A DNA stretch of 52,806 nt. Origin: Octopus bimaculoides. Its lineage: Eukaryota. The position numbers and the translations under genes were made by a program. Where the stretch lies: positions 87,147,047 through 87,199,852 of the forward strand of contig NC_068986.1 of the NCBI RefSeq assembly GCF_001194135.2. The letters are read 5' to 3'. The notes under the pieces are model-generated. The model saw only the letters and a program-made list of their open reading frames with translations, had not been told where the DNA came from and searched no databases. Shown in pieces: positions 1,358 to 50,185 of this stretch. Numbering within the stretch: position 1 is the stretch's first letter; each line of letters begins with the position of its first letter.

Positions 1358-1586
1358 ATTTCTTTATTGCCTACAAGGGGCTAAACATAGAGGGAGACAA
1401 ACAGGGGTAGACAAAGGGATTAAGTCGATTATATCGACCCTGGTACGTAACTGGTACTTACTTTATCGACCCCGAAAGGATGAAAGGCAAAGTCTACCCC
1501 GTCGGAATTTGAACTCAGAACGTAAAGACAGGCGAAATACCGCTAAGCATTTCGCCCGTCGTGCTAACATTTCTGCCAGCTCACCG
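1358..1586 (-). mobile_element. tRNA-derived SINE, family B (tail variant 1)
   Basis: On the minus strand: head GGTGAGCTGGCAGAAATGTTAGC, box B GAGTTCAAATTCC, central CTTTCATCCTTTCGGGGTCGATAAAGTAAGTACCAG. The same body recurs at 9872, 12994, 37355 and 49985. Confidence 0.85.
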
Positions 1587-1878: not shown

Positions 1879-1980
1879 GTATGAAACAACGCGTTTAATC
1901 CGGTCACTGTGCAAGGCATTGTGGGTTTATGTTCCTTACCGTGGTTGTATGTTTCTTACATATTGTTGACTATCTGTTAT

Positions 1981-2035
1981 CTTTTACAGGTTTCAGTCAT
2001 TAGAGTGCGGCCATGCAGGGAGCCCTCCTTGAAAA
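1981..2035 (-). mobile_element. SINE-A-type 3' tail fragment
   Basis: Minus strand TTCAAGGAGGGCTCCCTGCATGGCCGCACTCTAATGACTGAAACCTGTAAAAG is roughly 80% identical by eye to the family A tail GGCGGTGCTCCAGCATGGCCGCAGTCAAATGACTGAAACAAGTAAAAG. Confidence 0.8.
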
Positions 2036-2046
2036 ATGTATGAGAT

Positions 2047-2164
2047 GCTTACAGCACCTAGGTTTCCCAATCGGTCACCCATCTAAGTACTCACTATGCT
2101 CGACGTTGTTCAACTTCGGTAATCGGACGAGAACCGGTGTATTCAAAGTGATGTAGCCGTGTGG
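2047..2164 (-). pseudogene. 5S rRNA-derived sequence (near full length, diverged)
   Basis: Minus strand reads ACGGCTACATCACTTTGAATACACCGGTTCTCGTCCGATTACCGAAGTTGAACAACGTCGAGCATAGTGAGTACTTAGATGGGTGACCGATTGGGAAACCTAGGTGCTGTAAGC. This is colinear with invertebrate 5S rRNA over ~118 nt. Box A (AGTTGAAC) and box C (AGATGGGTGACC) carry substitutions. Confidence 0.9.
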
Positions 2165-2530
2165 AGATATATTTTTTGTAATTCATGATCAACTTGCGCG
2201 GCGTAAATAAAATCATATTTAAATGTTTACAAGATGTTGTTAAATCATTCACCAACAACTTCAGCAAATATTGTTCATGCACGAAAACATAGTGATACAG
2301 ACATTGACCAACTTGGAAAGCTCTAACTAATGACATTATTGTTTTAAAATTTCTGGTAGTCCTTGTTTATTTATTTATCTATTCTATCGAATTGTCAAGA
2401 AAGGGTATTTGTGTGTAGCGAACCTGCATTGACACAATTCCCTTTCATAAGATATGTAAAAGTAACATACGCACACATACACGCTCATAAAATAGATATA
2501 ATGATAGATATATATATATATATACTGTTT

Positions 2531-2935
2531 TACTCTATTACTTGTTTCAGTCATTTGACTGCGGCCATGCTGGAGCACCGCCTTTAGTCGAGCAAATCGA
2601 CCCCAGGACTTATTCTTTGTAAGTCTAGTACTTATTCTATCGGTCAATTTGACCAAACCGCTAAGTTACGAGGACGTAAACACACCAGCATCTGTTGTCA
2701 AGCGATGTTAGGGGACAGACATAGACACACAAACAAACACACACACACACACACATATATATACATATATACGACGGGCTTCTTTCAGTTTCCGTCTACC
2801 AAATCCACTCACAAGGCTCTAGTCGGCTCGAGGCTATAGTAGAAGACACTTGCCCAAGGTGCCACACAGTGGGACTGAACCCGGAACCATGTGGTTGGTA
2901 AGCAAGCTACTTACCACACACCCACTCCTACGCCT
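2531..2935 (-). mobile_element. tRNA-derived CORE-type SINE, family A, full length
   Basis: Head AGGCGTAGGAGTGGGTGTGTGGTAAG with box B GGTTCAGTCCC, CORE-like CCTTGGGCAAGTGTCTTC, internal CA/TA microsatellite, and tail ending GACTGAAACAAGTAA. Near-identical copies occur at 4541, 28081 and 39571. Confidence 0.92.
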
Positions 2936-3313
2936 ATATATAGATACACACACAGACACACACACACATATATATGTATGAGTGTGTATATATATATATG
3001 TACGTGTGTATGTGTGTACATATATATATATGAAAAGTATGTATGCACATATGAATATGTATATATGTATATAATATGCGTGCACCCGTGTGAATATATG
3101 TACAATTCTAAAGTAGTTATGGAAATTATAAGCGAGGAGTGTTTTCCGCTTTTACAGTAAGGATATGTTCAATATTCATACACACAATTATAATAATAGA
3201 TATACATAATTACAAACGCTATGTATTTTTGTATGTATGAATGCGTGTATGTATGTAGGTGTGTATATATTTATGGATATATGTATATAAAGCCTGTATT
3301 TTTATAGACATAC

Positions 3314-4073: not shown

Positions 4074-4540
4074 CCAAATGGGAAAAAATGAGAGGACAGA
4101 GTAATAGAAATATAGTTAGGAAAATAATAAAGAGTAAAATATTGAGAGAACGAGGGAGAGAGTGAGAGAGGGGGGAGAATGGGAGAGAAAGAGACTGAGT
4201 AGAAATAAATTGACGCAGTACAAGCTATAGTACAAGGGATAATGGGAGTGTAATGAGACGTTCTTAAATAATTAAAGAATTAATATGATTATGAATTAAT
4301 ATACATATTTATGTTGCTATAATCCATTCAAAGTACAACAGACAGCGATGTTTCACTACCACTACTGTCACTGAACACGTCCGCATTGTTTTTTTTTTTG
4401 TTTTTGTTTGTTATTTGATGTATTCATACCCGCTCACATACTGCATATACACGCATATACATATACATATGCATATACATATACATATACCTACCTACAT
4501 ATATACGTACTTATATTTATATATTCTCTTTTTTTTTTTT

Positions 4541-4944
4541 ACTCTTTTACTTGTCTCAGTCATTTGACTGCGGCCATGTTGGAGCACCGCCTTTAGTCGA
4601 GCAAATCGACCCCAGGAATTATTCTTTGGAAGCCTAGTACTTATTCTATCGGTCTCTTTTTGCCGAACCGCTAAGTTACGGGGACGTAAACACACCAGCA
4701 TCGGTTGTCAAGCGATGATGGGGGGACAAACACAGACACACAAACACACATACATACATATACATATACATACATATATACGACGGGCTTCTTTCAGTTT
4801 CCGTCTACCAAATCCACTCACAAGGCTTTGGTCGGCCAGAGGCTATACTAGAAGACACTTGCCCAAGTTGCCACGCGGTGGGACTGAACCCGGAACCATG
4901 TAGTTGGTAAACAAGCTACTTACGACACAGTCACTCCTGCGCCT
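4541..4944 (-). mobile_element. SINE family A, full length
   Basis: Colinear with 2531-2935, including head, CORE-like block, internal microsatellite and tail. Confidence 0.92.
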
Positions 4945-5012
4945 ATATATGCATATATATATATAAACACACACAGAATCGCCAATATATAAAAATGTAT
5001 ATTTACACACAT

Positions 5013-7436: not shown

Positions 7437-8024
7437 TCAGGACAAAAATTCGCACGAGTCTCGACTCGTACAACAAATTACTCGTACAATGGTGCACTCG
7501 TGCTGTGAGTGTGCGCGTGAGTTTGTGTATGAATATATAATATATATAATTATATATATATATGAATGTATGAAAGTGTGTATGCGTATACGTAAATGCA
7601 TATTTACGCACACGCACATACACACACAAACACACACACACAAACACAGAGAGAGATATATATTCATATATTTTCATACATGAACTGATATGAATATGTA
7701 TATATTTTTGCTTGTTTTTAAATACAAAGGTACATTATCAAAATAGGAATAATCTAACTAATATTAAGAGTGCAGCAGGTGTAGGCTATTGGTTGCAGTT
7801 GCTCTTACTAGAAGCCATTAGTTCTATAATCTAAGGTCAGATACGTACATTGACATTGTAAGTAGAAATATACGCACTAATTCATACACAGCTGATGCAG
7901 TTTATGGTGCAACGTACTCAAGACCCTTTAGTAACAGTGACTGCAATAGGCAGTCATTCCTATGTATGTACATATACATACATATATGCTTAAACACATA
8001 AATAACTAAATACACACACGTATA

Positions 8025-8230
8025 TTCTTTTATTTGTTTCAGTCATTTGAGTGCAGCCATGCTGGAGCACCGCCTTTAGTCGAACAAATCGACCCCAGGA
8101 CTTATACGTTGTAAGCCTAGTACTTATTCTATCGGTTTTCTTTTGCCGAACCGCTAAGTTACGGGTACGTAAATACACCATCATCGGTTTTCAAGCGATG
8201 GTGGCGGGGGTGGCAAACGCAGACACAGAA
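8025..8230 (-). mobile_element. SINE family A, 3' half
   Basis: Tail and 3' body match 2531-2730. It ends in (TA)n with no head beyond. Confidence 0.88.
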
Positions 8231-8232
8231 AC

Positions 8233-8273
<41 letters not shown>

Positions 8274-9871: not shown

Positions 9872-10040
9872 TAAGCATTTTGCCTGTCCTTGTGCTCTGA
9901 GTTCAAATTCCGCTGAGGTCGACTTTGCATTTCATCCTTTCAGGGCAGATAAATAAAGTACTAGTGGAGTACTGGGGTAAGTGTAAACGACTAATCCACT
10001 TTCCAAAAATTTCAGGCTAGGGGCTTATATTAGAAAGGAT
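9872..10040 (+). mobile_element. SINE family B, degenerate (tail variant 2)
   Basis: CTGAGTTCAAATTCCGCTGAGGTCGACTTTGCATTTCATCCTTTCAGGGCAGATAAATAAAGTACTAG. Confidence 0.8.
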
Positions 10041-10043
10041 TGT

Positions 10044-10058
10044 TGTTGTTACTGTTGT

Positions 10059-10119
<61 letters not shown>

Positions 10120-10129
10120 GTTGCTGCTG

Positions 10130-10181
<52 letters not shown>

Positions 10182-10222
10182 CACTTCTGCTGCTGCTGCT
10201 GCTACTACTACTGCTGCTGCTG

Positions 10223-10270
<48 letters not shown>

Positions 10271-10290
10271 TTATTATTATTATTGTTATT
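10044..10290. repeat. compound trinucleotide tract (GTT, CTA, CTG, TTA)
   Basis: Read directly. It explains the poly-L and poly-V ORFs in the track. Confidence 0.95.
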
Positions 10291-10627
10291 ATTTAATTCT
10301 ATATTTACTGGAGATTACGAGATAACAATCTATTAGATTATTTATTATATACACCTGATTGCCTTGCATTTTGTCACATTATCAATCAATGGATCATCCA
10401 CATCAACTGTAATGGACAGTGGTGCTCCCTATATACTTCCGTTTCCTGACACCATCAGAAACTCGGCTGTATCTCTCTCTCTCTACGCATTCAATTCCCT
10501 ATTGTTTTATATAGATTTGTTAGCCAAATGAATGTTCTTTTTTTCTATATTTGATTTTACTTTTTCTATTGTTCAAGCTTAGAACAAGGAGAAGACAAAG
10601 AGCAAAAAGAAAAGGAGTAAGATGAAA

Positions 10628-10646
10628 GGGAGTAATAATAATGATA

Positions 10647-10680
<34 letters not shown>

Positions 10681-10731
10681 GGATAATGATGATGATGATG
10701 ATGATGATGACAATAATAATAATAATAATAA

Positions 10732-10762
<31 letters not shown>

Positions 10763-10812
10763 AAGAAGAAGAAGGAGAAGAAGAAGAAGAAGAAGAAGAA
10801 GAAGAAGAAGAA

Positions 10813-10844
<32 letters not shown>

Positions 10845-11126
10845 AGAGGAAGAATAAGAATAAGAAGAAGAAGAAGAAGAAGAAGCAGAAGAAGAAGATG
10901 ATGAAGAAGAAAAAGATGATGATGAAGAAGAAGAAGAAGAAGAAGAAGAAGAAGAAGAAGATGAAGAAGAAGAAGATGATGATGATGAAGAAGAAGAAGA
11001 AGAAGAAGAAGAAGAAGAAGATGATGATGAAGAAGAAGATGATGATGATGATGATGAAGAAGAAGAAGAAGAAGAAGATGATGAAGAAGAAGAAGAAGAG
11101 GAAGAAGAAGAAGAATGATAACGATA

Positions 11127-11157
<31 letters not shown>

Positions 11158-11249
11158 TGATGATGTTGATGATGTTGATGATGATGATGATGATGATGAT
11201 GTTGATGATGATGATGATGATGATGATGATGTTGATGATGATGATGATA

Positions 11250-11281
<32 letters not shown>

Positions 11282-11295
11282 GGTGGTAGTGGTGG

Positions 11296-11326
<31 letters not shown>

Positions 11327-11330
11327 AATA
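10628..11330. repeat. ~700-bp compound trinucleotide microsatellite (AAT, GAT, AAG, GAC, GTT, GGT)
   Basis: Read directly. It explains the poly-N/K/D/M/L ORFs in the track. Confidence 0.97.
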
Positions 11331-11994
11331 CTAAAAACTAATATCCACGAAGGAAACGAAGTGATGTTGTGGAAACATATCATTCATTTATCAAGTGATA
11401 GTTTGGTTATCTCTAGCATTTCATTTATTTGTTAATAAATAAATAACTCATAAGATTGCATTTAATTATATTGGTCACGAACATTCAGAGATATACATAG
11501 CTACATAATTACAATTTAAATAGATAATGAGCGCTTGCACATATCAGATCGTAATTACATTAATATTTCCATATATATGTATATATATATNNNNNNNNNN
11601 NNNNNNNNNNNNNNNNNNNNNNNNNNNNNNNNNNNNNNNNNNNNNNNNNNNNNNNNNNNNNNNNNNNNNNNNNNNNNNNNNNNNNNNNNNNNNNNNNNNN
11701 NNNNNNNNNNNNNNNNNNNNNNNNNNNNNNNNNNNNNNNNNNNNNNNNNNNNNNNNNNNNNNNNNNNNNNNNNNNNNNNNNNNNNNNNNNNNNNNNNNNN
11801 NNNNNNNNNNNNNNNNNNNNNNNNNNNNNNNNNNNNNNNNNNNNNNNNNNNNNNNNNNNNNNNNNNNNNNNNNNNNNNNNNNNNNNNNNNNNNNNNNNNN
11901 NNNNNNNNNNNNNNNNNNNNNNNNNNNNNNNNNNNNNNNNNNNNNNNNNNNNNNNNNNNNNNNNNNNNNNNNNNNNNNNNATATATATATATAT

Positions 11995-12993: not shown

Positions 12994-13200
12994 GGCAAAA
13001 TCGTTACCGGGCCGGACAAAATGCGTAATAGTATCTCTTTCGGCTTTATGTTCTGAGTTCAACTTCCGCCGAGGTTGACTTTGTATTTCCTCTCTTTGGA
13101 GTCGATGAAATAAACACCAGTTGATCACTGGGGTCGATGTAATCGGCTTAACCACTTCCCCGAAATTGTTGACATTTTGGCAAAATTTGGAACCAATATT
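12994..13200 (+). mobile_element. SINE family B (tail variant 2)
   Basis: GGCAAAATCGTTA...TTCTGAGTTCAACTTCCGCCGAGGTTGACTTTG...GGGGTCGATGTAATCG...GGCAAAATTTGGAACCAATATT. Confidence 0.82.
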
Positions 13201-15018: not shown

Positions 15019-16235
15019 GTGTGTGTGCGTGTGTGTGTGCGTGTGTGTGTGTATACACGCACGCACACGCGCGCGCACACACGTACACAAACACACGTAC
15101 ACAAACACACACACACACAAACACACACACAAACACACACACACAAACACTCACACAAACACTCACACAAACTCACGTGCATATGCATGTTTGTCTATGT
15201 GTGCATGTGTTATTGCGGATATAACAGCGTTGCATCTATTCTGCAAAATTTTGAATTGCATTTTGGTTATGCATATGTGTGTGTGCTTGTGTGTGTTTGT
15301 GTGTGTTTGTATGTGAGGGTACGAACCATTTATTGTCATTGTCCTTAATATGTTTACATTTATATCAGCCTAGTGGCCCAAAAAGCAAAAGAATAGTAAA
15401 AAGGAAAAGCAGTATGCTGTGATGATGACGACGATGATGATGCTAACCATCATCATCATCATCATCATCATCATGCCCACCACCACCATCATGCAGCAGC
15501 ATTGTCGTTTGTTATTGATTTCAGAATACCGTTTCTGCCTTTGACGTTCGTGGTATTGATATTTTTTATCAACTTTAATATTAAATATTTTATATTTGAC
15601 ATACACACATTTCATATTTAATACATTACAAATTTTGCACACATACATACTCACACACACAAACACCCACACACACAAACGCACATAAACACACGCATAT
15701 ACGTATTATATATAATATTTGTATATACATATATGTATGTGCGTGGGGGGGGTGTAAATCAATACGTTATATGACATGACTCCACCTAAAATATTAATAT
15801 ACAAGGCCTTGAAAGGTTTGTGACTTCTATCATGGAGGTTTTAGACTGGCAACATATGGACGAAGTTATTTGGCAACATATTGACGAGGTTAGACAGGCC
15901 GAGGGAAGCAGAAAAGACTGTAAAATGCATTAAAAAGCTGGAACATACCAAAATGTTAGAGAGTGAACGACATTTTGTTGGGAACATGTTCCGTAGAGTG
16001 TATTTTATAGAAATATACTATCATTTACAGATACCTTCTAATGTAGACTTTTATTATGTTGGAAAAAAAAAGTCCTTCGTCAAATGTTCGTGGTAAAAAC
16101 CTAAACGACAAGTCTTGTCGAACTTGTTAGTAGAGGACTGGAAAGCGCGCAAGAAACTGGACGATGGCATTCGAGTACATTTGACATGATACAATATCAG
16201 TTTATACTAACGAAGATATTACTGTACACACACGT

Positions 16236-19342: not shown

Positions 19343-19915
19343 CACAGACATGCAGGAAGTAAATAGACACCGTTAATTTTCAAAATATTTTGATATTAGT
19401 TAGTTAAAGAGAGATTTTCTTCTAGCTGCTCGTCCATAATACCCAAGCTTATGCAGATATATAACACACGTTCTTGGACTAACTTCTAGCTGTTTTGCAA
19501 TGCCAGAAGCCTTCGAACGGGGTTCGTTTTCCACAATTCTCTTCAAACAGCGAAGCTTCCTTTCCGAGGGTCCAGGTCGGCTGGGATAAGAATCTGTTCA
19601 ATCTTTTCCGTAGCATTTGAATTGCACTATAATTCTATTAACAGTAGCAAGAGGAATTTGAAGATTTTCGGCAATTTTTCGCTGGCTAAGACCCGCCTCA
19701 GATTGCCCAACAATACGACCTCTTTGAAAATTTGACAGTTTTCCTGAATTTTTTGTGCGTGGCATGGTTACTCTTCGCAAATGCTTAATATAATGGCACC
19801 TGGAATGAAAAAGAAGAATTACATTGTAAATTTTACACCACTGAAAACATATTAAGACGCTTAGATCAGACATTTTGAAAATTAAAGGTGTCTATGTATT
19901 TTCTGCACACCACAC
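19343..19915 (-). mobile_element. Tc1-like DNA transposon, internally deleted
   Basis: TIR cores at 19351-19386 and 19872-19907 (36 bp, 4 mismatches). Minus-strand transposase N-terminus [46 protein letters not shown], continuing after a frameshift as ...KLGYYGRAARRK. No DDE domain. Confidence 0.88.
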
Positions 19916-27850: not shown

Positions 27851-28080
27851 ATTTCCATATTCAACAGATACATTTTTGGCACAAGTAATGAGCTAGTCGT
27901 TTACATCGAACTTGGCGTTTAATTTGTTCTTATGTTATCAACCCCGCAATGATAAAAGGCAAAGCCCACCAGGGTAGCATTTGACTAAGAATGAGTCTCT
28001 TTCAATAATAAACATTATAGTGTGTACAACTTCAGGGTTCAAAATAAAGGCCTTTAAATGATCCATGGCATTCTCTTTTT

Positions 28081-28359
28081 TACTCTCTTTTACTTGTTTC
28101 AGTCATTTGACTGCGGCCATGCTGGAGCACCGACTTTAGTCGAGCAAATCGACCCCAGGACTTATTCTTTGTCAGCCTAGTATTTATTCTATCGGTCTCT
28201 TTTTGCCGAACCGCTAAGTTACGTGGATGAAAACACACCAGCATCGGTTGTCAAGCGATGGAGGGACAGACACAGTCACACAAACACACATACATACATA
28301 CATACATATTTAAACATTGATTTCAGATCGGAAGANNNNNNNNNNNNNNNNNNNNNNNN

Positions 28360-28405
<46 letters not shown>

Positions 28406-28568
28406 GACGGGCTTCTTTCAGTTTCCGTCTACCAAATCCACTCACAAGGCTTTGGTCGGCCCAAGGCTATAGTAGAAGACACTTGCCCAAAGTGCCACGC
28501 AGTGGGACTGAACCCGGAACCATGTGGTTGGTAAGCAAGCTACTTACCACACAGCCACTCCTTCGCCT
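28081..28568 (-). mobile_element. SINE family A, full length, N-gap inside the internal microsatellite
   Basis: Colinear with 2531-2935. Confidence 0.92.
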
Positions 28569-29719
28569 AAGGAGTTAAATAGTTTATAAATATGTTCGCC
28601 GTTCTTTTGCACCCATTGAATAATTATCCGTTCGGTAGACATTTGCACTCAACCCAAATATGTTCTTTGCTGATTCTAATAAACAAGAGCTCGTACTATA
28701 ATGAGATTCATGGGTCGGAGGTAGCATCGGCTGAAGAGATGCAAAACGAGGTCGAAACATCACAGCATCTCGAAGTCAGCTTACACCGGCGAATCCCACG
28801 AGTTGCAAAGAGGTATTACTTTAAAGGAGGTTTTCTCCGATAGTGAGTGACATCAGCGGTCATCATGTTCACGTTCGAATCTGCTTCAAATATTAAGAAT
28901 AAATAGATAGATGCCTTGTAGTTTGGGTTCTCGCAGTTCTGCGTGTACCCATGTATAACGCGCGCGTGTACACAAACACTCACACACATACATATACACA
29001 CGTACGCACACATACATACACACACACACTCAGACACATACTCACTCCTACATACAAAGACACACACAAAACATATATACATTCAGTCACTTGTCCTCTG
29101 CTAATTAACCCTTGCTCACATTTACCCATCACAATCATATACATACACCTATGCCGTTTCTGTACCTTTAACCTCTGCAGATATTTTTAGCCATACAGTT
29201 CATTTCTCTCTCACTCTCTCTTTCCTTCTCTCTCTCACTCTATCTATCTATCTCTCTATCTGTGCATCTTTCTATCAATCTCTCTATCACTCATTTTCTC
29301 TCTCAATCTTTCTCTGACTCTTCTTTATTCTTTTATTTCTTTCACATTCACCTGATGTTTCTCACTCCCGCTCTATGTGCTTGTAAAGAATTTATTATGA
29401 GTGAAATTTGCTAATACCATGTGTTGAATATATGAATACGACCGAATGTAATGCATGGTTGTACCTTAATATATAACCATATGCATATATGTGCGTTTAT
29501 ATACATACGTGTGTGTGTACCTCTGTACGTGTATATATATAAGATATATACACATACATACTCAGACGTATATGCATACACATACATATGCATATATATA
29601 TTCTCATATATATGTACATACATACATATATGGGGGAATGTTAATTCGTGGATGTGTGTATTATATACATAATGCATGGTTTGCGCATATATATGCGTTT
29701 AATTTGCAGAAGATCTAAG

Positions 29720-35577: not shown

Positions 35578-36059
35578 CTGCACAGAAAGTATGGGCGTAT
35601 CGATTACAGTTGGGATTAGTGATTTCCTGAAGTAATACTAATTAAAAATTGATTCTTCTCTACAAATTTGCATGTCAAAAGATGTATAATTAAATCATCG
35701 TTTCGATATATGGAATTAGGTTGGAGTGGAGAAATATAATGTTTCTGTAAAGATGGCTGTGCTTTGAGTACGATATATTGGCAACAAAAACAGTCAATTA
35801 ATCTCTCTATCTCTTCTTCTCTTGCTATTCGTAGCCATAGTTCTGAATATTGGTTTCGAATTTTGGCACAAAGCTAACAGTCTTTTATGATAATAATAGC
35901 AATAATAATAATAGTCAAAACGAAGAGCGCGATTTTAGATGTTTTATTTTTTGAACAACATTTCGACAGAACGTCTGTCTTTCTCAAGTTCAAACCAAAA
36001 GGTGATTGAAAATTCAAAATTTCAGAAACCAAACGTAGACTATGAACGTGAGTAATCAG

Positions 36060-36801
36060 CGTCCATACGTTGATAGAATGACAGAGAAAGAAATAGACAG
36101 AGAAAAATCCCAGCAATGGCTGAGAAGCTCAGGACTCAAAGCAGAGACTGAAGGATTTTTAATTGCTGCACAAGACCAGAGCCTCCCCACCAGAAATTAC
36201 CAAAAACACATAATGAAAAGAAATATAACAAGTAACTGTAGAATATGTGGAGATGGACAAGAAACAATAANNNNNNNNNNNNNNNNNNNNNNNNNNNNNN
36301 NNNNNNNNNNNNNNNNNNNNNNNNNNNNNNNNNNNNNNNNNNNNNNNNNNNNNNNNNNNNNNNNNNNNNNNNNNNNNNNNNNNNNNNNNNNNNNNNNNNN
36401 NNNNNNNNNNNNNNNNNNNNNNNNNNNNNNNNNNNNNNNNNNNNNNNNNNNNNNNNNNNNNNNNNNNNNNNNNNNNNNNNNNNNNNNNNNNNNNNNNNNN
36501 NNNNNNNNNNNNNNNNNNNNNNNNNNNNNNNNNNNNNNNNNNNNNNNNNNNNNNNNNNNNNNNNNNNNNNNNNNNNNNNNNNNNNNNNNNNNNNNNNNNN
36601 NNNNNNNNNNNNNNNNNNNNNNNNNNNNNNNNNNNNNNNNNNNNNNNNNNNNNNNNNNNNNNNNNNNNNNNNNTTCTACGCAAAACACTTTCAATACAGT
36701 AAACATAAGAGCACCACAGCAAACCACAGCACATACCCAAGGCGCACAGAGCTGCGCTCGGTAGTGAAGTGAAAGCACGTTATAAAAATAAAACTACTGA
36801 A
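36060..36801 (+). mobile_element. R4/Dong-like (RLE-type) non-LTR retrotransposon, 5'-truncated 3' portion
   Basis: WLRSSGLKAETEGFLIAAQDQSLPTRNY...CRICGDGQETI is the post-RT region and start of the CCHC finger typical of the R4 clade. After the gap the ORF ends LRKTLSIQ-stop (36700-36702), followed by a short 3' UTR and (TAA)n. Confidence 0.8.
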
Positions 36802-37354: not shown

Positions 37355-37569
37355 ATGGTTTCAGATTTTGGAACAAGGCCAGGAATTTCGTGGTGGGCTC
37401 GTCGGTTGCATTGACCCCCAGTGCAGAATTAGTACCTATGTTATCGATTCCGAAAGGATGAAATACAAAGTCGACTTCGGGAGAATTTGAACTCAGAATG
37501 TGCAGACGGACGAAACGCCTCTAAGTATTTTGTTCAGTGGCTTCTAAAGATTCTGCCAGTTCGCCACCT
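37355..37569 (-). mobile_element. SINE family B (tail variant 2)
   Basis: Plus strand CGAAAGGATGAAATACAAAGTCGACTTCGGGAGAATTTGAACTCAGAA...TTCTGCCAGTTCGCC. Confidence 0.8.
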
Positions 37570-37959: not shown

Positions 37960-38165
37960 TGCGAATGTGTGTCTGTTTGTGTGCGTGTGTATATGTGTGT
38001 GTATGTGTGCGTGTGTATGTGTTTGCATATGTATCTTCTTAAAACGTGACCAATAAAATGAGTACCTAACTTAAAAATATATAAGTCCTGAGGTTGATTT
38101 ATTCCCCTAAACCCTTCAAAACGGTCCGTCATCATGGCCGCAGTCCAAGAAGCAAAACCTGAAGT
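37960..38165 (+). mobile_element. SINE family A, old 3' half
   Basis: GT-rich tract, then AATAAAATGAGTACC...AAGTCCTGAGGTTGATTT...AAACCCTTCAA...CATGGCCGCAGTC. Confidence 0.6.
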
Positions 38166-39170: not shown

Positions 39171-39570
39171 CACACACGCAGCCATACACAATACACATGC
39201 ACATTTTTACATGCTCATTTGCATATAGATATATGTATGCTTACAAAAATGCATTATATATACATGTATATGATAAATATAGTGGAAAATTATCATGAAC
39301 ACTAGTATAAAAAATTTGTTCCTATGTACGTTTCACTATACCAGTTATTTGAAACTCAGTGTTGGATTTTTGAAGTGCATTTTGGTGTCTAACCATATTG
39401 GCTCATTCGGTTACAGAAATCTAATATCTGAAGTCGGAGCTCGAACACATAACACAGTCGTCGTATATCTAACTGCACTCGTAAGATATATAATGAATAT
39501 ATTAATTAGAATGGTAGGCGTATTTACAAACACTTCATAAACCACCCACCATATATATCTATATGCACTT

Positions 39571-40104
39571 TACTCTTTTACTTGTTTCAGTCACTTGACT
39601 ATGGCCATACTGGAGCACCGCCTTTAGTCGAGCAAATCGACCCAAGGACTTATTCTTTGTAAGCCAAGTACTTATTCTATCGGTCTCTTTTACCGAACCT
39701 CTAGGTTACGGGGACGTAAACACACCAGCATCCGTTCTCAAGCGATGTTAGGGGGACAAACACAGACGCACAAACATAAATACACACTTACATATACATA
39801 TATATATATATATATATANNNNNNNNNNNNNNNNNNNNNNNNNNNNNNNNNNNNNNNNNNNNNNNNNNNNNNNNNNNNNNNNNNNNNNNNNNNNNNNNNN
39901 NNNNNNNNNNNNNNNNNNNNNNNNNNNNNNNNNNNNNNNNNNNNNNNNNNNNNNNNNNNNNNNNNNNNTATATATACATATTTACGACGGCCTTCTTTCA
40001 GTTTCCGTCTACTAAATCCCCTCACAAGGCTTTGGTCGGCCCGAGGCTATAGTAGAAGACACTTGCCCAAGGTGCCACGCAGTGGGACTGAACTCGGAAC
40101 CATG
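39571..40104 (-). mobile_element. SINE family A, head truncated by ~40 nt, N-gap inside the internal microsatellite
   Basis: Colinear with 2531-2890. Confidence 0.9.
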
Positions 40105-43311: not shown

Positions 43312-44034
43312 TCTCTGTCAGTGTGTGTGTGCTTTCGTCAGTGGAGTGTGATTCGTGGTAGATTTGGTTTCTTAAGAATCATGTATGTGTATGTGTGTAA
43401 TGTGTACGCGTGTGCAAAATACATGAGTGAAGGTGTGTTTACAGGTGAGTTACATTGGTTCCATTAATGTGTGGGTGAGAATAACAGTAGATATTCTAAT
43501 TTGATATTTGATACATCGTCTGATACCTGCTTTGCTTTCTTGATTTAGGAGTTGATAACTTTAGTACCAGTAATATACCTTCCTTTATTTAAATCATTAG
43601 TGTATGAAACTGTATAGTTCTCTATTTAAGACATGAGGAATTATGTACATTATATACATTATTTACATATGACGGATATTTATCCTCGTCTTGTTAACAC
43701 CAAACAAGATGAGGATAAATATCCGTCAAATGTAAATAAAATAAATAATGTAAATAATGAAACTGTGTATGTACCTATATATAAAATTATCCAAATAATT
43801 TCTTGGTGAAAAATATCTAAACAAAAATAAACAATGATACAAGGCAAATAATTACATGCTTTAAGGAAATAATAGGGAGAAGATTTAACATTTCGGATAG
43901 CGGTCATTCATCAAGAGAAAAAAATTACGTAATGAGAAAGAAAACTGCTTTTATACCAGATAACAGTGGAATGTACTTATATGTACTTTGGGTAGAAATT
44001 GCTTGTTTAAATAAATGTGTATGTGATAAAGAGA

Positions 44035-45745: not shown

Positions 45746-45814
45746 ATATACATATATATAAACCGAAAGAATAAATACCATGCTTAAAAAACAAAAACGT
45801 AATGATGTCGATTT

Positions 45815-45880
45815 AATCGACTAAAACTTCTTTGAGACGGTGCTGCAGCATGGTCGCAGTCTAATGACTTCAACAATTAG
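45815..45880 (+). mobile_element. SINE family A tail fragment
   Basis: ATCGACTAAAACTTCTTTGAGACGGTGCTGCAGCATGGTCGCAGTCTAATGACT. Confidence 0.7.
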
Positions 45881-46317
45881 AAGACAAAAAGATAAAAGAT
45901 ACATATAAACACATTCACACAGAAATACATGCACATACACACACACATATATATACACATATATACTTATATATAATCTGTGTGTGTATGTGTGTGTGTG
46001 TGTGTGTGTGTGTATGCATGCACAAGCAATCAGCCACATAACGACGCAAGTAATATATATGACCTTGTGTTACTGTGTATACGTATATCTATTAGTTTCA
46101 CAATGCCTACCTATTAAATTGACATTTATATATGAAAATTAAATATAGGTGCATTTATATTCTTAGATCCCAATTTTCCTCGCAGGAACAACTCACACGG
46201 CCGGTCGTCTATTTCTGTCTCGCCTTTTATATAAAATTCCTGAACTTTCTATCAATAAACACAGCTATTGAAACGTACCACCATCCCTAACAATCTAACA
46301 TAAATCATACCGTCTTA

Positions 46318-47595: not shown

Positions 47596-47654
47596 ATGGA
47601 AATATGTTGGCTGAGCTCCTTTTTTCATCATAGTTTGTGTGTATTCTTTATTCT

Positions 47655-47875
47655 TCTTTGACGTGTCACAGTCATTTGATTGCGGCCATACTGGAGCACT
47701 GCCTTAAAGAGCTTTTTTTAGTGGAAGAAATCGACCTCAGGACTTGTTCTTTGTAAGTTTACTACTTATTCTATCGGTTTTCATGTCGAACCGCTAGATA
47801 CGAGGACGTAATCATACCATCATTGGTTGTGAAGCGATGGTGGGGAGACAATCATACACACAGACACGCACACAT
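47655..47875 (-). mobile_element. SINE family A, 3' half (variant with extra segment before GGCGGTGCTCC)
   Basis: CAGTCATTTGATTGCGGCCATACTGGAGCAC...TACTTATTCTATCGG...GAACCGCTAG...AGCGATGGTGGGGAGAC. Confidence 0.82.
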
Positions 47876-47887
47876 AAATATATATAT

Positions 47888-48214
47888 TGAGCAAGCATCA
47901 TCTACTATGGCCTCAGGCCGCCCAAAGCCTTGTGAATGGATTGGGTAGATGTAAACTGACAGAAGCTCATCATGTGTGTGTGTGTGTGTGTGTGCCTATG
48001 TGTGTATGTCTTCGTGTATTTGTTTGTCCGTCACCACCACTTGACAACCGCTGTTCGTGTGCTTACGTCCCCGTAACATAGTCAATCGGCAAAAGTTACC
48101 GATGGAATAAGTACTAGGCCTTAAAAAATGCCCTGGGGTCTCTTCCTTCGACTAAAACCCTTCAAGGTGGTACCCTAGCATGGCCGCAGTCAAATGAGAG
48201 AAATAAGTAAAAAG
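47888..48214 (+). mobile_element. SINE family A, headless (CORE block, microsatellite, tail)
   Basis: CAAAGCCTTGTGAATGGATT...(GT)n...CTTGACAACCG...ACGTCCCCGTAAC...TAAGTACTAGGC...GCATGGCCGCAGTCAAATG. Confidence 0.85.
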
Positions 48215-48231
48215 AAAAAAAGATTAAAAAG

Positions 48232-49984: not shown

Positions 49985-50185
49985 TAAGTACAAGGCTTTA
50001 AATCTTAGAGAAGGGGATTTATTAATTACATCGACCCCAGGAATTGAGCGGTAATTATTTCATCGCCTTCAAAAGAATGAGAGGCAAAGTCAATCTCGGT
50101 GAAATTTGAACTCAGAACGGAAAGTCAGAAGAAATGCCGCGAAGTGCTTTGCCCGGTGTACTAACGAGTCTTCCTGCTCCGTACC
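49985..50185 (-). mobile_element. SINE family B, degenerate
   Basis: ATTACATCGACCCCAG...GAGGCAAAGTCAATCTCGGTGAAATTTGAACTCAGAACG. Confidence 0.75.

What the first reader, a model, noticed from the sequence alone, without database searches (positions are those of the whole stretch)
1981..2164. 5S rRNA head joined to the SINE-A 3' tail: candidate SINE3
Seen: a full-length 5S-like sequence (2164-2047) is followed ~12-15 nt later, on the same strand, by the tail used by family A tRNA-SINEs. Established: 5S-headed SINE3 families exist in fish, some mammals and insects, and use LINE-derived tails. I know of none from cephalopods. Inferred: this is a 5S-headed SINE that shares its partner LINE with family A. 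Caveats: a T5 run (2032-2036) between head and tail could terminate Pol III, and boxes A and C are mutated.
Basis: partly seen in the sequence, partly recalled or inferred. Interest (0 to 1): 0.7.

Follow-up and report, generated by a model that had tools for sequence, protein, structure and literature searches.

The report
Decayed 5S rRNA copy fused to octopus SINE tail
In this octopus DNA a worn-out full-length copy of the 5S ribosomal RNA is joined to the 60-base tail used by the genome's common jumping elements, so it looks like a 5S-headed SINE, but I could not test whether it is one of many copies or a one-off.

Summary
Rfam finds one full-length 5S rRNA match at 2164..2046 (-) (76 bits, threshold 38). 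After a 9-nt linker, about 60 nt (2036..1977) match the 3' ends of nine other SINE copies in the window, on the same strand.

The host is Octopus bimaculoides or a close relative. The tail is closer to a divergent "B-type" SINE than to family A. A third SINE family carries a similar end, so this is a shared 3' module.

Chance adjacency is unlikely (about 1.5e-3, or about 1e-4 for a tail with no SINE body). The flanks are unique and no target-site duplication is detectable. The copy is dead: five broken 5S base pairs, substitutions in box A and the intermediate element, and a T5 run. That T5 run aligns with CCCTTC/TTCTTC in B-type tails, so it is probably a later mutation.

The decisive test, other loci with the same junction, could not be run. 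No searchable collection held octopus DNA beyond one 25-kb locus.

- Best reading (about 0.5): a dead copy of a 5S-headed, SINE3-type element.
- Main rival (about 0.3): an orphan template-switch chimera.

Cephalopods are not a blank: the giant squid genome paper reports about 24,000 5S-derived loci.

The parts
2046..2164 (-). Full-length 5S rRNA-derived head. It is decayed: five non-canonical base pairs, three of them in helix I, plus substitutions in box A and the intermediate element. The box C core GGGTGACC...TGGG is retained.
   Evidence: Rfam RF00001, 76 bits against gathering score 38, model positions 1-120, with the alignment and its NC line. It is the only 5S hit in the window at E <= 1.
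2037..2045 (-). A 9-nt linker, TCTCATACA, between the 5S 3' end and clear tail homology. It matches B-type TCGACTAAA only weakly (4 of 8 columns), so its origin is undecided.
   Evidence: Sequence and MAFFT alignment with A and B copies.
2032..2036 (-). A T5 run, which is a potential Pol III terminator. It lies inside the segment that aligns with CCCTTC, TTCTTC or CTCTTT of B-type SINE tails, so C-to-T changes after insertion could have created it.
1977..2036 (-). The 3' tail module, ATTTTTCAAGGAGGGCTCCCTGCATGGCCGCACTCTAATGACTGAAACCTGTAAAAGATAA, shared with octopus tRNA-type SINEs. It is closest to B-type and reaches the families' 3' terminus (AAAAGATAA). It may extend to 1970 (CAGATAG).
   Evidence: BLAST against 8 window copies, 75-87.5% identity. 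Core motif with 2 mismatches. 47/61 identical columns to the B consensus and 42/61 to the A consensus. L003 copy at 83% over 60 nt.
1994..2007 (-). An imperfect inverted repeat, CACTC-TAAT-GACTG, inside the tail. Most other copies read CAGTC-NAAT-GACTG. It is a candidate hairpin for reverse-transcriptase recognition but is unproven.
   Evidence: 89% of cells pair across 11 tails, against 7-38% when the partner is slid. There is no covariation, and RNAalifold predicts nothing.
2528..2941 (-). Reference copy of family A. It is about 415 bp, with a head carrying A/B-box-like motifs, a CCTTGGGCAAG domain, an internal (TA/TG)n tract and the tail. Other copies lie at 4520-4960(-), 8023-8267(-), 28070-28569(-) and 39569-40104(-).
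   Evidence: BLAST with a full copy and consensus building.
47887..48221 (+). Reference B-type copy, whose tail carries the extra AAACCCTTC segment that the 5S element also has. Other B-type tails lie at 47644-47887(-), 45762-45907(+) and about 38090-38160(+).

Best explanation
This is a dead, old copy of a 5S-headed retroposon with SINE3-type architecture. Two steps are inferred. First, a LINE reverse transcriptase began copying the 3' end of a B-type SINE RNA, or of the LINE RNA carrying the same module. After about 60-70 nt it switched template to the 3' end of a 5S rRNA and copied it to its 5' end. Second, a fusion of this kind can be transcribed by Pol III from the 5S internal promoter and retroposed through the tail that the LINE enzyme recognises. 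The copy in the window would be one decayed product of that amplification. What is shown is the head, the tail, their order, strand and spacing, and the decay. What is inferred is the template switch, the Pol III transcription, the LINE dependence and the existence of sister copies.
For: 1. The 5S match is full length (model 1-120). It ends within 9-15 nt of the start of tail homology, on the same strand.

2. The tail runs to the families' own 3' terminus. The element carries no SINE body, whereas all nine other tails in the window are attached to SINE body sequence.

3. Chance adjacency is about 1.5e-3 per 5S locus, and about 1.1e-4 if a body-less tail is required.

4. The flanks 2165-2527 and 1586-1975 have no other copy in the window or in L003, so the unit is just head plus tail, about 190 bp, a typical SINE size.

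5. The same tail module ends at least three different SINE families (A, B and L003:7459-7524). This is the pattern expected of a LINE-recognised 3' module that heads can be swapped onto.

6. There are precedents. HaSE3 is a 5S head on the 3' region of the tRNA-SINE HaSE1, with an RTE partner, and some copies lack TSDs (PMC3272025). CoeSINE5 and CoeSINE4 are a similar pair (PMC5786205).

7. If the window was chosen blind to this feature, one dispersed 5S-like locus in 70.8 kb implies 965-212,000 such loci per 2.7-Gb genome at 95% confidence (the genome size is from my own knowledge). That is many more than orphan chimeras would supply. The giant squid paper reports about 24,000 5S-derived loci.
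Against: - Only one copy is known. No second junction was found in 70.8 kb of octopus DNA.
- Translated searches found only ordinary antisense-5S ORFs, with none of the tail residues.
- No target-site duplication was found. There is no exact repeat of 6 nt or more, and the best local alignment of the flanks is matched or beaten by 27% of random pairs.
- This copy has a T5 run between head and tail, and substitutions in box A and the intermediate element.
- No LINE carrying this tail was found. The one LINE fragment in the window ends in (AAT)n.
- The blind-window argument fails if the window was selected because of this feature.
Confidence: 0.5

Rival explanations
1. This is an orphan chimeric retropseudogene. 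The same template switch from a SINE or LINE 3' end onto 5S rRNA happened once, was integrated, and never amplified. It would be a would-be SINE3 that stayed single-copy.
For: The anatomy is exactly that of small-RNA/retroelement chimeras: a full-length small RNA at the 5' side and a 5'-truncated retroelement at the 3' side, in the same orientation. Such chimeras are cited as evidence for template switching to small RNAs (Buzdin 2003, as cited in PMC4758252). A T5 run and a damaged promoter are no obstacle to a one-off cDNA. Only one copy has been seen. 5S type-1 promoters depend on upstream signals, so retroposed 5S copies are usually silent (PMC3272025).
Against: Orphan chimeras are rare, so meeting one in a single 47-kb sample is improbable unless the window was chosen for it. 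Another cephalopod is reported to have about 24,000 5S-derived loci.
Confidence: 0.3
2. This is a chance juxtaposition. A dispersed 5S pseudogene or orphon happens to lie beside an independently inserted, severely 5'-truncated SINE tail fragment.
For: Body-less tail fragments do exist. L003:15426-15458 is a 33-nt tail fragment with unrelated sequence upstream. No TSD brackets the combined unit. The 9-nt linker has no clear origin. A T-run a few bases after the 5S end could be a remnant of the gene's own terminator.
Against: The probability of a same-strand tail starting within 15 nt of the 5S 3' end is about 1.5e-3, or about 1.1e-4 for a body-less tail. The T-run lies in a stretch that aligns with B-type tails, (C/T)(C/T)CTTCAAGG.
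Confidence: 0.12
3. This is a functional or recently functional solitary 5S rRNA gene with its own downstream T5 terminator, and the tail is irrelevant.
For: The match is full length, well above the Rfam threshold, and a T5 run lies 10 nt downstream.
Against: Five base pairs are non-canonical, three of them in helix I. Conserved box A positions are changed (TAAGC to TGAAC) and the intermediate-element region is changed. It is solitary rather than in a tandem array. There is no T-run directly at the 3' end.
Confidence: 0.03

Closest known systems
HaSE3 with HaSE1 (Helicoverpa armigera; PMC3272025)
   Same: A 5S rRNA-derived head is joined to the 3' region of a tRNA-derived SINE living in the same genome. 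The origin was proposed to be a template switch from the SINE RNA to 5S rRNA. The tail is shared with an RTE-type LINE. Some copies have no detectable TSD, and abundance is low relative to the tRNA-SINE.
   Different: HaSE3 shares both body and tail with HaSE1 (94% identity between consensuses). It was shown to be multi-copy (16 sequences, 73-99% identical to the consensus) and present in several species, and its LINE (HaRTE1) was identified. Here only about 60 nt of tail is shared, one copy is known, and no LINE was found.
SINE3 / 5S-derived SINEs in general (zebrafish SINE3, CoeSINE5, SINE-1_Pmo, lepidopteran SINE3s)
   Same: They have a 5S head carrying a type-1 Pol III promoter plus a LINE-related tail. 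Such families are known to have arisen independently many times.
   Different: These are defined families with consensus sequences and intact promoter boxes. Many also carry a central body such as Deu or RTE 5'-UTR pieces. This element has no body between head and tail.
Small-RNA/retroelement chimeric retrogenes (Buzdin et al. 2003, cited in PMC4758252)
   Same: A full-length small Pol III RNA is fused upstream of a 5'-truncated retroelement 3' end, in the same orientation, made by an RT template switch.
   Different: Those are single-copy products of mammalian L1 and usually have TSDs and poly(A). Here the 3' partner is a stringent-type SINE tail and no TSD is visible.
About 24,000 5S rRNA-derived loci in the giant squid genome (PMC6962438)
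   Same: This is a cephalopod genome with a large excess of dispersed 5S-like loci, which the authors suspected to be SINEs.
   Different: The lineage is decapodiform, so any relationship to this octopus element is unknown.
Octopus tRNA-derived SINEs (OK, OR1, OR2 of Ohshima and Okada 1994; Ceph/CORE-type SINEs)
   Same: Families A and B here are abundant octopus SINEs with a CCTTGGGCAAG motif like the Ceph/CORE domain described in PMC5786205. The 5S element uses their tail.
   Different: The head is 5S rather than tRNA-like, and the element has no Ceph/CORE-like domain and no internal microsatellite. I did not test whether A or B equals OK, OR1 or OR2.

Membership tests
SINE3 (5S rRNA-derived SINE family) | The 5' head is derived from 5S rRNA. 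| tested here: met
   RF00001, 76 bits against gathering score 38, model positions 1-120.
SINE3 (5S rRNA-derived SINE family) | An internal type-1 Pol III promoter (box A, intermediate element, box C) is conserved, at least in the family consensus. | tested here: inconclusive
   In this copy the box C core GGGTGACC..TGGG is kept. Box A reads TGAAC where the model has UAAGC, and the intermediate-element region is altered. No consensus and no authentic octopus 5S sequence were available for comparison.
SINE3 (5S rRNA-derived SINE family) | The 3' tail is shared with a partner LINE or with SINEs mobilised by it. | tested here: inconclusive
   Sharing with SINE families A, B and a third family is shown. 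No LINE with this tail was found in the window or in L003.
SINE3 (5S rRNA-derived SINE family) | There are many dispersed copies with the same head-tail junction in unrelated flanks. | not testable with these tools
   No octopus DNA is present in metagenome, genome or viral collections; the positive-control tail pattern gave 0 hits. Only 70.8 kb of octopus sequence was in hand, with one copy.
SINE3 (5S rRNA-derived SINE family) | Target-site duplications flank the element. | tested here: not met
The best local alignment scores 7, and 27% of random pairs score as high. This is expected to be weak evidence for an old copy.
SINE3 (5S rRNA-derived SINE family) | There is no Pol III terminator (T4 or longer) between promoter and tail. 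| tested here: not met
   T5 lies at 2036..2032. In this copy only, the homologous positions of B-type tails are CCCTTC, TTCTTC or CTCTTT.
Functional 5S rRNA gene | Helices are intact, the gene sits in a tandem array, and a terminator lies at the 3' end. | tested here: not met
   Five non-canonical pairs. It is solitary in 52.8 kb. The T-run begins 10 nt after the end.
Template-switch chimeric retropseudogene | A full-length small RNA lies 5' of a 5'-truncated retroelement 3' end, on the same strand and directly abutted. | tested here: met
   The 5S match covers 1-120, then a 9-15 nt gap, then the last 60 nt or so of the SINE tail through to its terminus.
Template-switch chimeric retropseudogene | The junction is single-copy (unique). 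| not testable with these tools
   The limitation is the same as for the copy-number test above.

The most novel reading that the evidence does not exclude
The element is a member of an abundant, so far uncharacterised, 5S-headed SINE family of octopuses. This would be the first SINE3 defined in a mollusc. It would have arisen by a head swap onto the 3' module already used by at least three tRNA-type SINE families, and would form part of the octopus-specific SINE expansion.
Probability: 0.45. Interest if true: 0.5.

Novelty: new member of a known kind. Interest (0 to 1): 0.35.

Why it matters
Octopus genomes are known for large lineage-specific SINE expansions. If a 5S-headed family uses the same tail as the tRNA-type families, it would show that octopus SINE diversity is built by swapping heads onto one LINE-recognised 3' module. 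It would extend SINE3 to molluscs. It would also give a concrete model for the unexplained excess of 5S-like loci reported in the giant squid. If the element is an orphan, it is still a clean snapshot of the template-switch step from which such families arise, but that is of modest interest. In either case the kind of element is already well described in fish, reptiles, mammals and insects.

Tried and rejected
1. Junction ORF against the 5.8-billion-protein index. The 50-aa ORF spanning tail, linker and 5S (2004-2153, plus strand) gave no candidates.

2. The same ORF with phmmer against 1.84 billion representatives. It gave 122 hits, all to the antisense-5S portion (QQHPVFPGGHPSKYW...) from many eukaryotes. 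None carried the tail residues. This is uninformative for copy number.

3. Junction pattern in JGI metagenome contigs. It gave 0 hits. The positive-control tail pattern also gave 0 hits there, and in GTDB genomes and IMG/VR. These collections hold no octopus DNA, so the negative result says nothing.

4. Reaching octopus DNA through proteins.
   - The LINE-fragment query returned only ENA host-associated contigs that lack family A.
   - A translated family-A consensus identified O. bimaculoides and gave one indexed protein, P0024. That yielded L003, 25 kb, with no 5S head.
   - The four UniRef-only octopus proteins I looked up, and a window ORF, are not indexed.

5. Literature. I found no description of a cephalopod SINE3. 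The paper said to hold the octopus 5S rRNA sequence (PMC326244), the Buzdin 2003 paper and the octopus genome paper are not held.

6. TSD search. None was found.

7. Tail hairpin. It pairs in 89% of cells but shows no covariation, and RNAalifold predicts nothing. It is therefore not claimed as a structure.

8. The LINE fragment at 36042-36800 was rejected as the partner, because it ends in (AAT)n.

9. L003:7440-8600 was checked for an RT reading frame upstream of a tail-like end. None was found; it is another SINE.

10. A larger composite element was rejected, because the flanks are unique.

Full report
**What is there**

On the minus strand, Rfam's 5S_rRNA model matches 2164..2046 at 76 bits (gathering score 38, E = 2.2e-14). 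It covers model positions 1-120 without truncation. This is the only Rfam hit above threshold in the 52.8-kb window. It is also the only 5S hit when the threshold is relaxed to E <= 1; the rest of that list is microsatellite noise. ARAGORN finds no tRNA gene.

The copy is not a working 5S gene:
- The alignment flags five non-canonical base pairs, three of them in helix I.
- The conserved UAAGC of box A reads TGAAC.
- The stretch corresponding to the intermediate element is altered.
- The GGGTGACC...TGGG core of box C survives.

I could not obtain the authentic octopus 5S sequence. I therefore cannot say exactly which differences are mutations rather than lineage-specific residues.

**The tail**

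After the 5S end the sequence reads TCTCATACA-TTTTT-CAAGGAGGGCTCCCTGCATGGCCGCACTCTAATGACTGAAACCTGTAAAAGATAA.

BLAST of this region against the window matches 2033..1977 to eight other sites, at 75-87.5% identity over 36-55 nt. A looser motif search brings this to nine other tails in the window and two in an independent octopus locus.

Its parts, in order, are:
- a head with A/B-box-like motifs;
- a CCTTGGGCAAG motif resembling the Ceph/CORE domain;
- an internal (TA/TG)n tract;
- the tail ...GGCGGTGCTCCAGCATGGCCGCAGTCAAATGACTGAAACAAGTAAAAGAGTAAAA.

A more divergent "B-type" set lies at 47644-47887, 47887-48221, 45762-45907 and about 38133 in the window, plus L003:13188 and L003:19700. These copies carry an extra pyrimidine-rich segment (AAACCCTTC, AATTCTTC or similar) before AAGG, and they end in AAAGATAAAA.

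The 5S element has both of these B-type features. It matches the B consensus at 47 of 61 columns, against 42 of 61 for the A consensus. A third, unrelated SINE in L003 (7459-7524) ends in GCAGTCCAATGACTGATGCAAATAAAAAAGATAAAAGG.

The tail is therefore a general 3' module of octopus SINEs rather than a family-A speciality. Its CAGTC-NAAT-GACTG inverted repeat pairs in 89% of cells across 11 tails. It shows no covariation and RNAalifold predicts nothing, so I note it only as a candidate recognition hairpin.

**Whose genome**

A translated family-A consensus hits Octopus bimaculoides proteins at 81-93% identity; these are exonised SINE pieces. One of them led to 25 kb of O. bimaculoides chromosome CM046609.1 (L003). 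L003 is full of family A copies at up to 93% identity. The window therefore comes from O. bimaculoides or a very close relative.

**Is the head-tail adjacency chance?**

There are nine other tails in 47,383 non-N bases. The chance that one starts within 15 nt downstream of a given 5S end, on the same strand, is about 1.5e-3.

All nine other tails are attached to SINE body sequence. Requiring a body-less tail lowers the figure to about 1.1e-4; one such fragment exists, at L003:15426-15458.

The 5S part is complete at both ends and the tail runs to the families' own terminus. The flanks (2165-2527 and 1586-1975) have no other copy in the window or in L003.

This is the anatomy expected from a reverse transcriptase that started on a SINE or LINE 3' end and switched template to the 3' end of a 5S rRNA. 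The same origin was proposed for HaSE3 in Helicoverpa (PMC3272025). The preference for switching to small RNAs is also seen in human chimeric retrogenes (cited in PMC4758252).

The T5 run at 2036..2032 would stop Pol III. It lies in the stretch that aligns with CCCTTC, TTCTTC or CTCTTT of B-type tails, so one to three C-to-T transitions in this old copy would create it. Another decayed SINE copy shows a T6 run in a homologous body region (L003:13188). The T5 run therefore says little about the ancestor.

No target-site duplication is detectable. There is no exact repeat of 6 nt or more, and the best gapped match of the flanks is equalled by 27% of random pairs. For a copy about 20% diverged from its sources this is weak evidence, and one HaSE3 copy (HaSE3.1) also lacked TSDs.

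**Family or orphan?**

This is the decisive question and I could not answer it directly.
- The DNA collections open to pattern scans contain no octopus DNA. A positive-control pattern for the very abundant family-A/B tail found nothing in JGI metagenomes, GTDB genomes or IMG/VR. The zero for the junction pattern is therefore uninformative.
- Translated searches across the junction found nothing in the word-indexed protein set.
- In the exhaustive phmmer search they found only ordinary antisense-5S ORFs without the tail residues.
- Only one octopus protein was indexed to a contig.
- In the 70.8 kb of non-N octopus sequence available, there is one copy.

Two indirect arguments favour a family.

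First, suppose the window was picked without regard to this feature. One dispersed 5S-like locus in 70.8 kb then implies roughly 1,000 to 200,000 such loci in a 2.7-Gb genome at 95% confidence (the genome size is from my own knowledge). That is far more than one-off chimeras would supply.

Second, the giant squid genome paper reports about 24,000 loci derived from 5S rRNA and suspects SINEs (PMC6962438). 5S-derived amplification in cephalopods is therefore plausible, and not entirely unreported.

Against a family: 5S type-1 promoters depend on upstream context, so retroposed copies are usually silent. I also found no paper that describes an octopus SINE3.

**Verdict**

My weights are:
- about 0.5 on a dead copy of an amplified 5S-headed SINE;
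- about 0.3 on an orphan template-switch chimera;
- about 0.12 on chance juxtaposition;
- about 0.03 on a solitary 5S gene.

The partner LINE is not identified. The only LINE fragment in the window ends in (AAT)n.

This is at most a new member of a well-known kind. Its main value would be to extend SINE3 to molluscs and to show head-swapping on a common tail module in the octopus SINE expansion. A single BLAST against the O. bimaculoides assembly would settle it.

Noticed in passing
window 28325-28335 (+): AGATCGGAAGA, the start of the Illumina adapter, sits directly beside an N gap inside a family-A SINE. This is probably an assembly or scaffolding artefact (0 expected by chance).
   Followed up: partly
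window 47644-48221: Two B-type SINE copies lie head-to-head (47887..47644 on the minus strand and 47887..48221 on the plus strand). They share a boundary and form a palindrome-like inverted pair.
   Followed up: no
window 19598-19873 (-): A 91-aa ORF has a Tc1/mariner-type HTH (Pfam HTH_SB, E = 1.3e-6). It is a DNA-transposon remnant.
   Followed up: partly
window 36042-36800 (+): A 5'-truncated LINE 3' end carries a CRICG zinc knuckle, is interrupted by an N gap and ends in (AAT)n. Its nearest proteins (50-71% identity) are only in ENA host-associated assemblies that lack octopus SINEs.
   Followed up: partly
window 1408-1585, 9877-10002, 12994-13157, 27895-27970, 37432-37565, 50006-50179: This is a third, unrelated SINE-like repeat family (GGTTTCAGATTTTGG...GTCGAC...GAATTTGAACTCAGAA) with six copies at 72-78% identity.
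   Followed up: no
L003:15426-15458 (-) and L003:7459-7524 (-): The first is a body-less 33-nt tail fragment that shares the TCTAATGACTGAAAC variant with the 5S element. The second is a different SINE family, with a (GAT)n tract, ending in a related CAGTCCAATGACTG...AAAGATAAAAGG tail. The tail module therefore serves at least three SINE families.
   Followed up: partly
window 43589-43728 (-): A SNORA72-like H/ACA snoRNA match falls just below threshold (37.1 bits against gathering score 43, E = 0.03).
   Followed up: no
window 15416-15475: A sub-threshold mir-598 match (38 bits against gathering score 69). The giant squid paper notes an unusually high mir-598 copy number (172), so this may be a repeat-borne hairpin.
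   Followed up: no
window 10040-11400: A low-complexity tract of about 1.3 kb that translates as poly-L, poly-I or poly-K in different frames.
   Followed up: no
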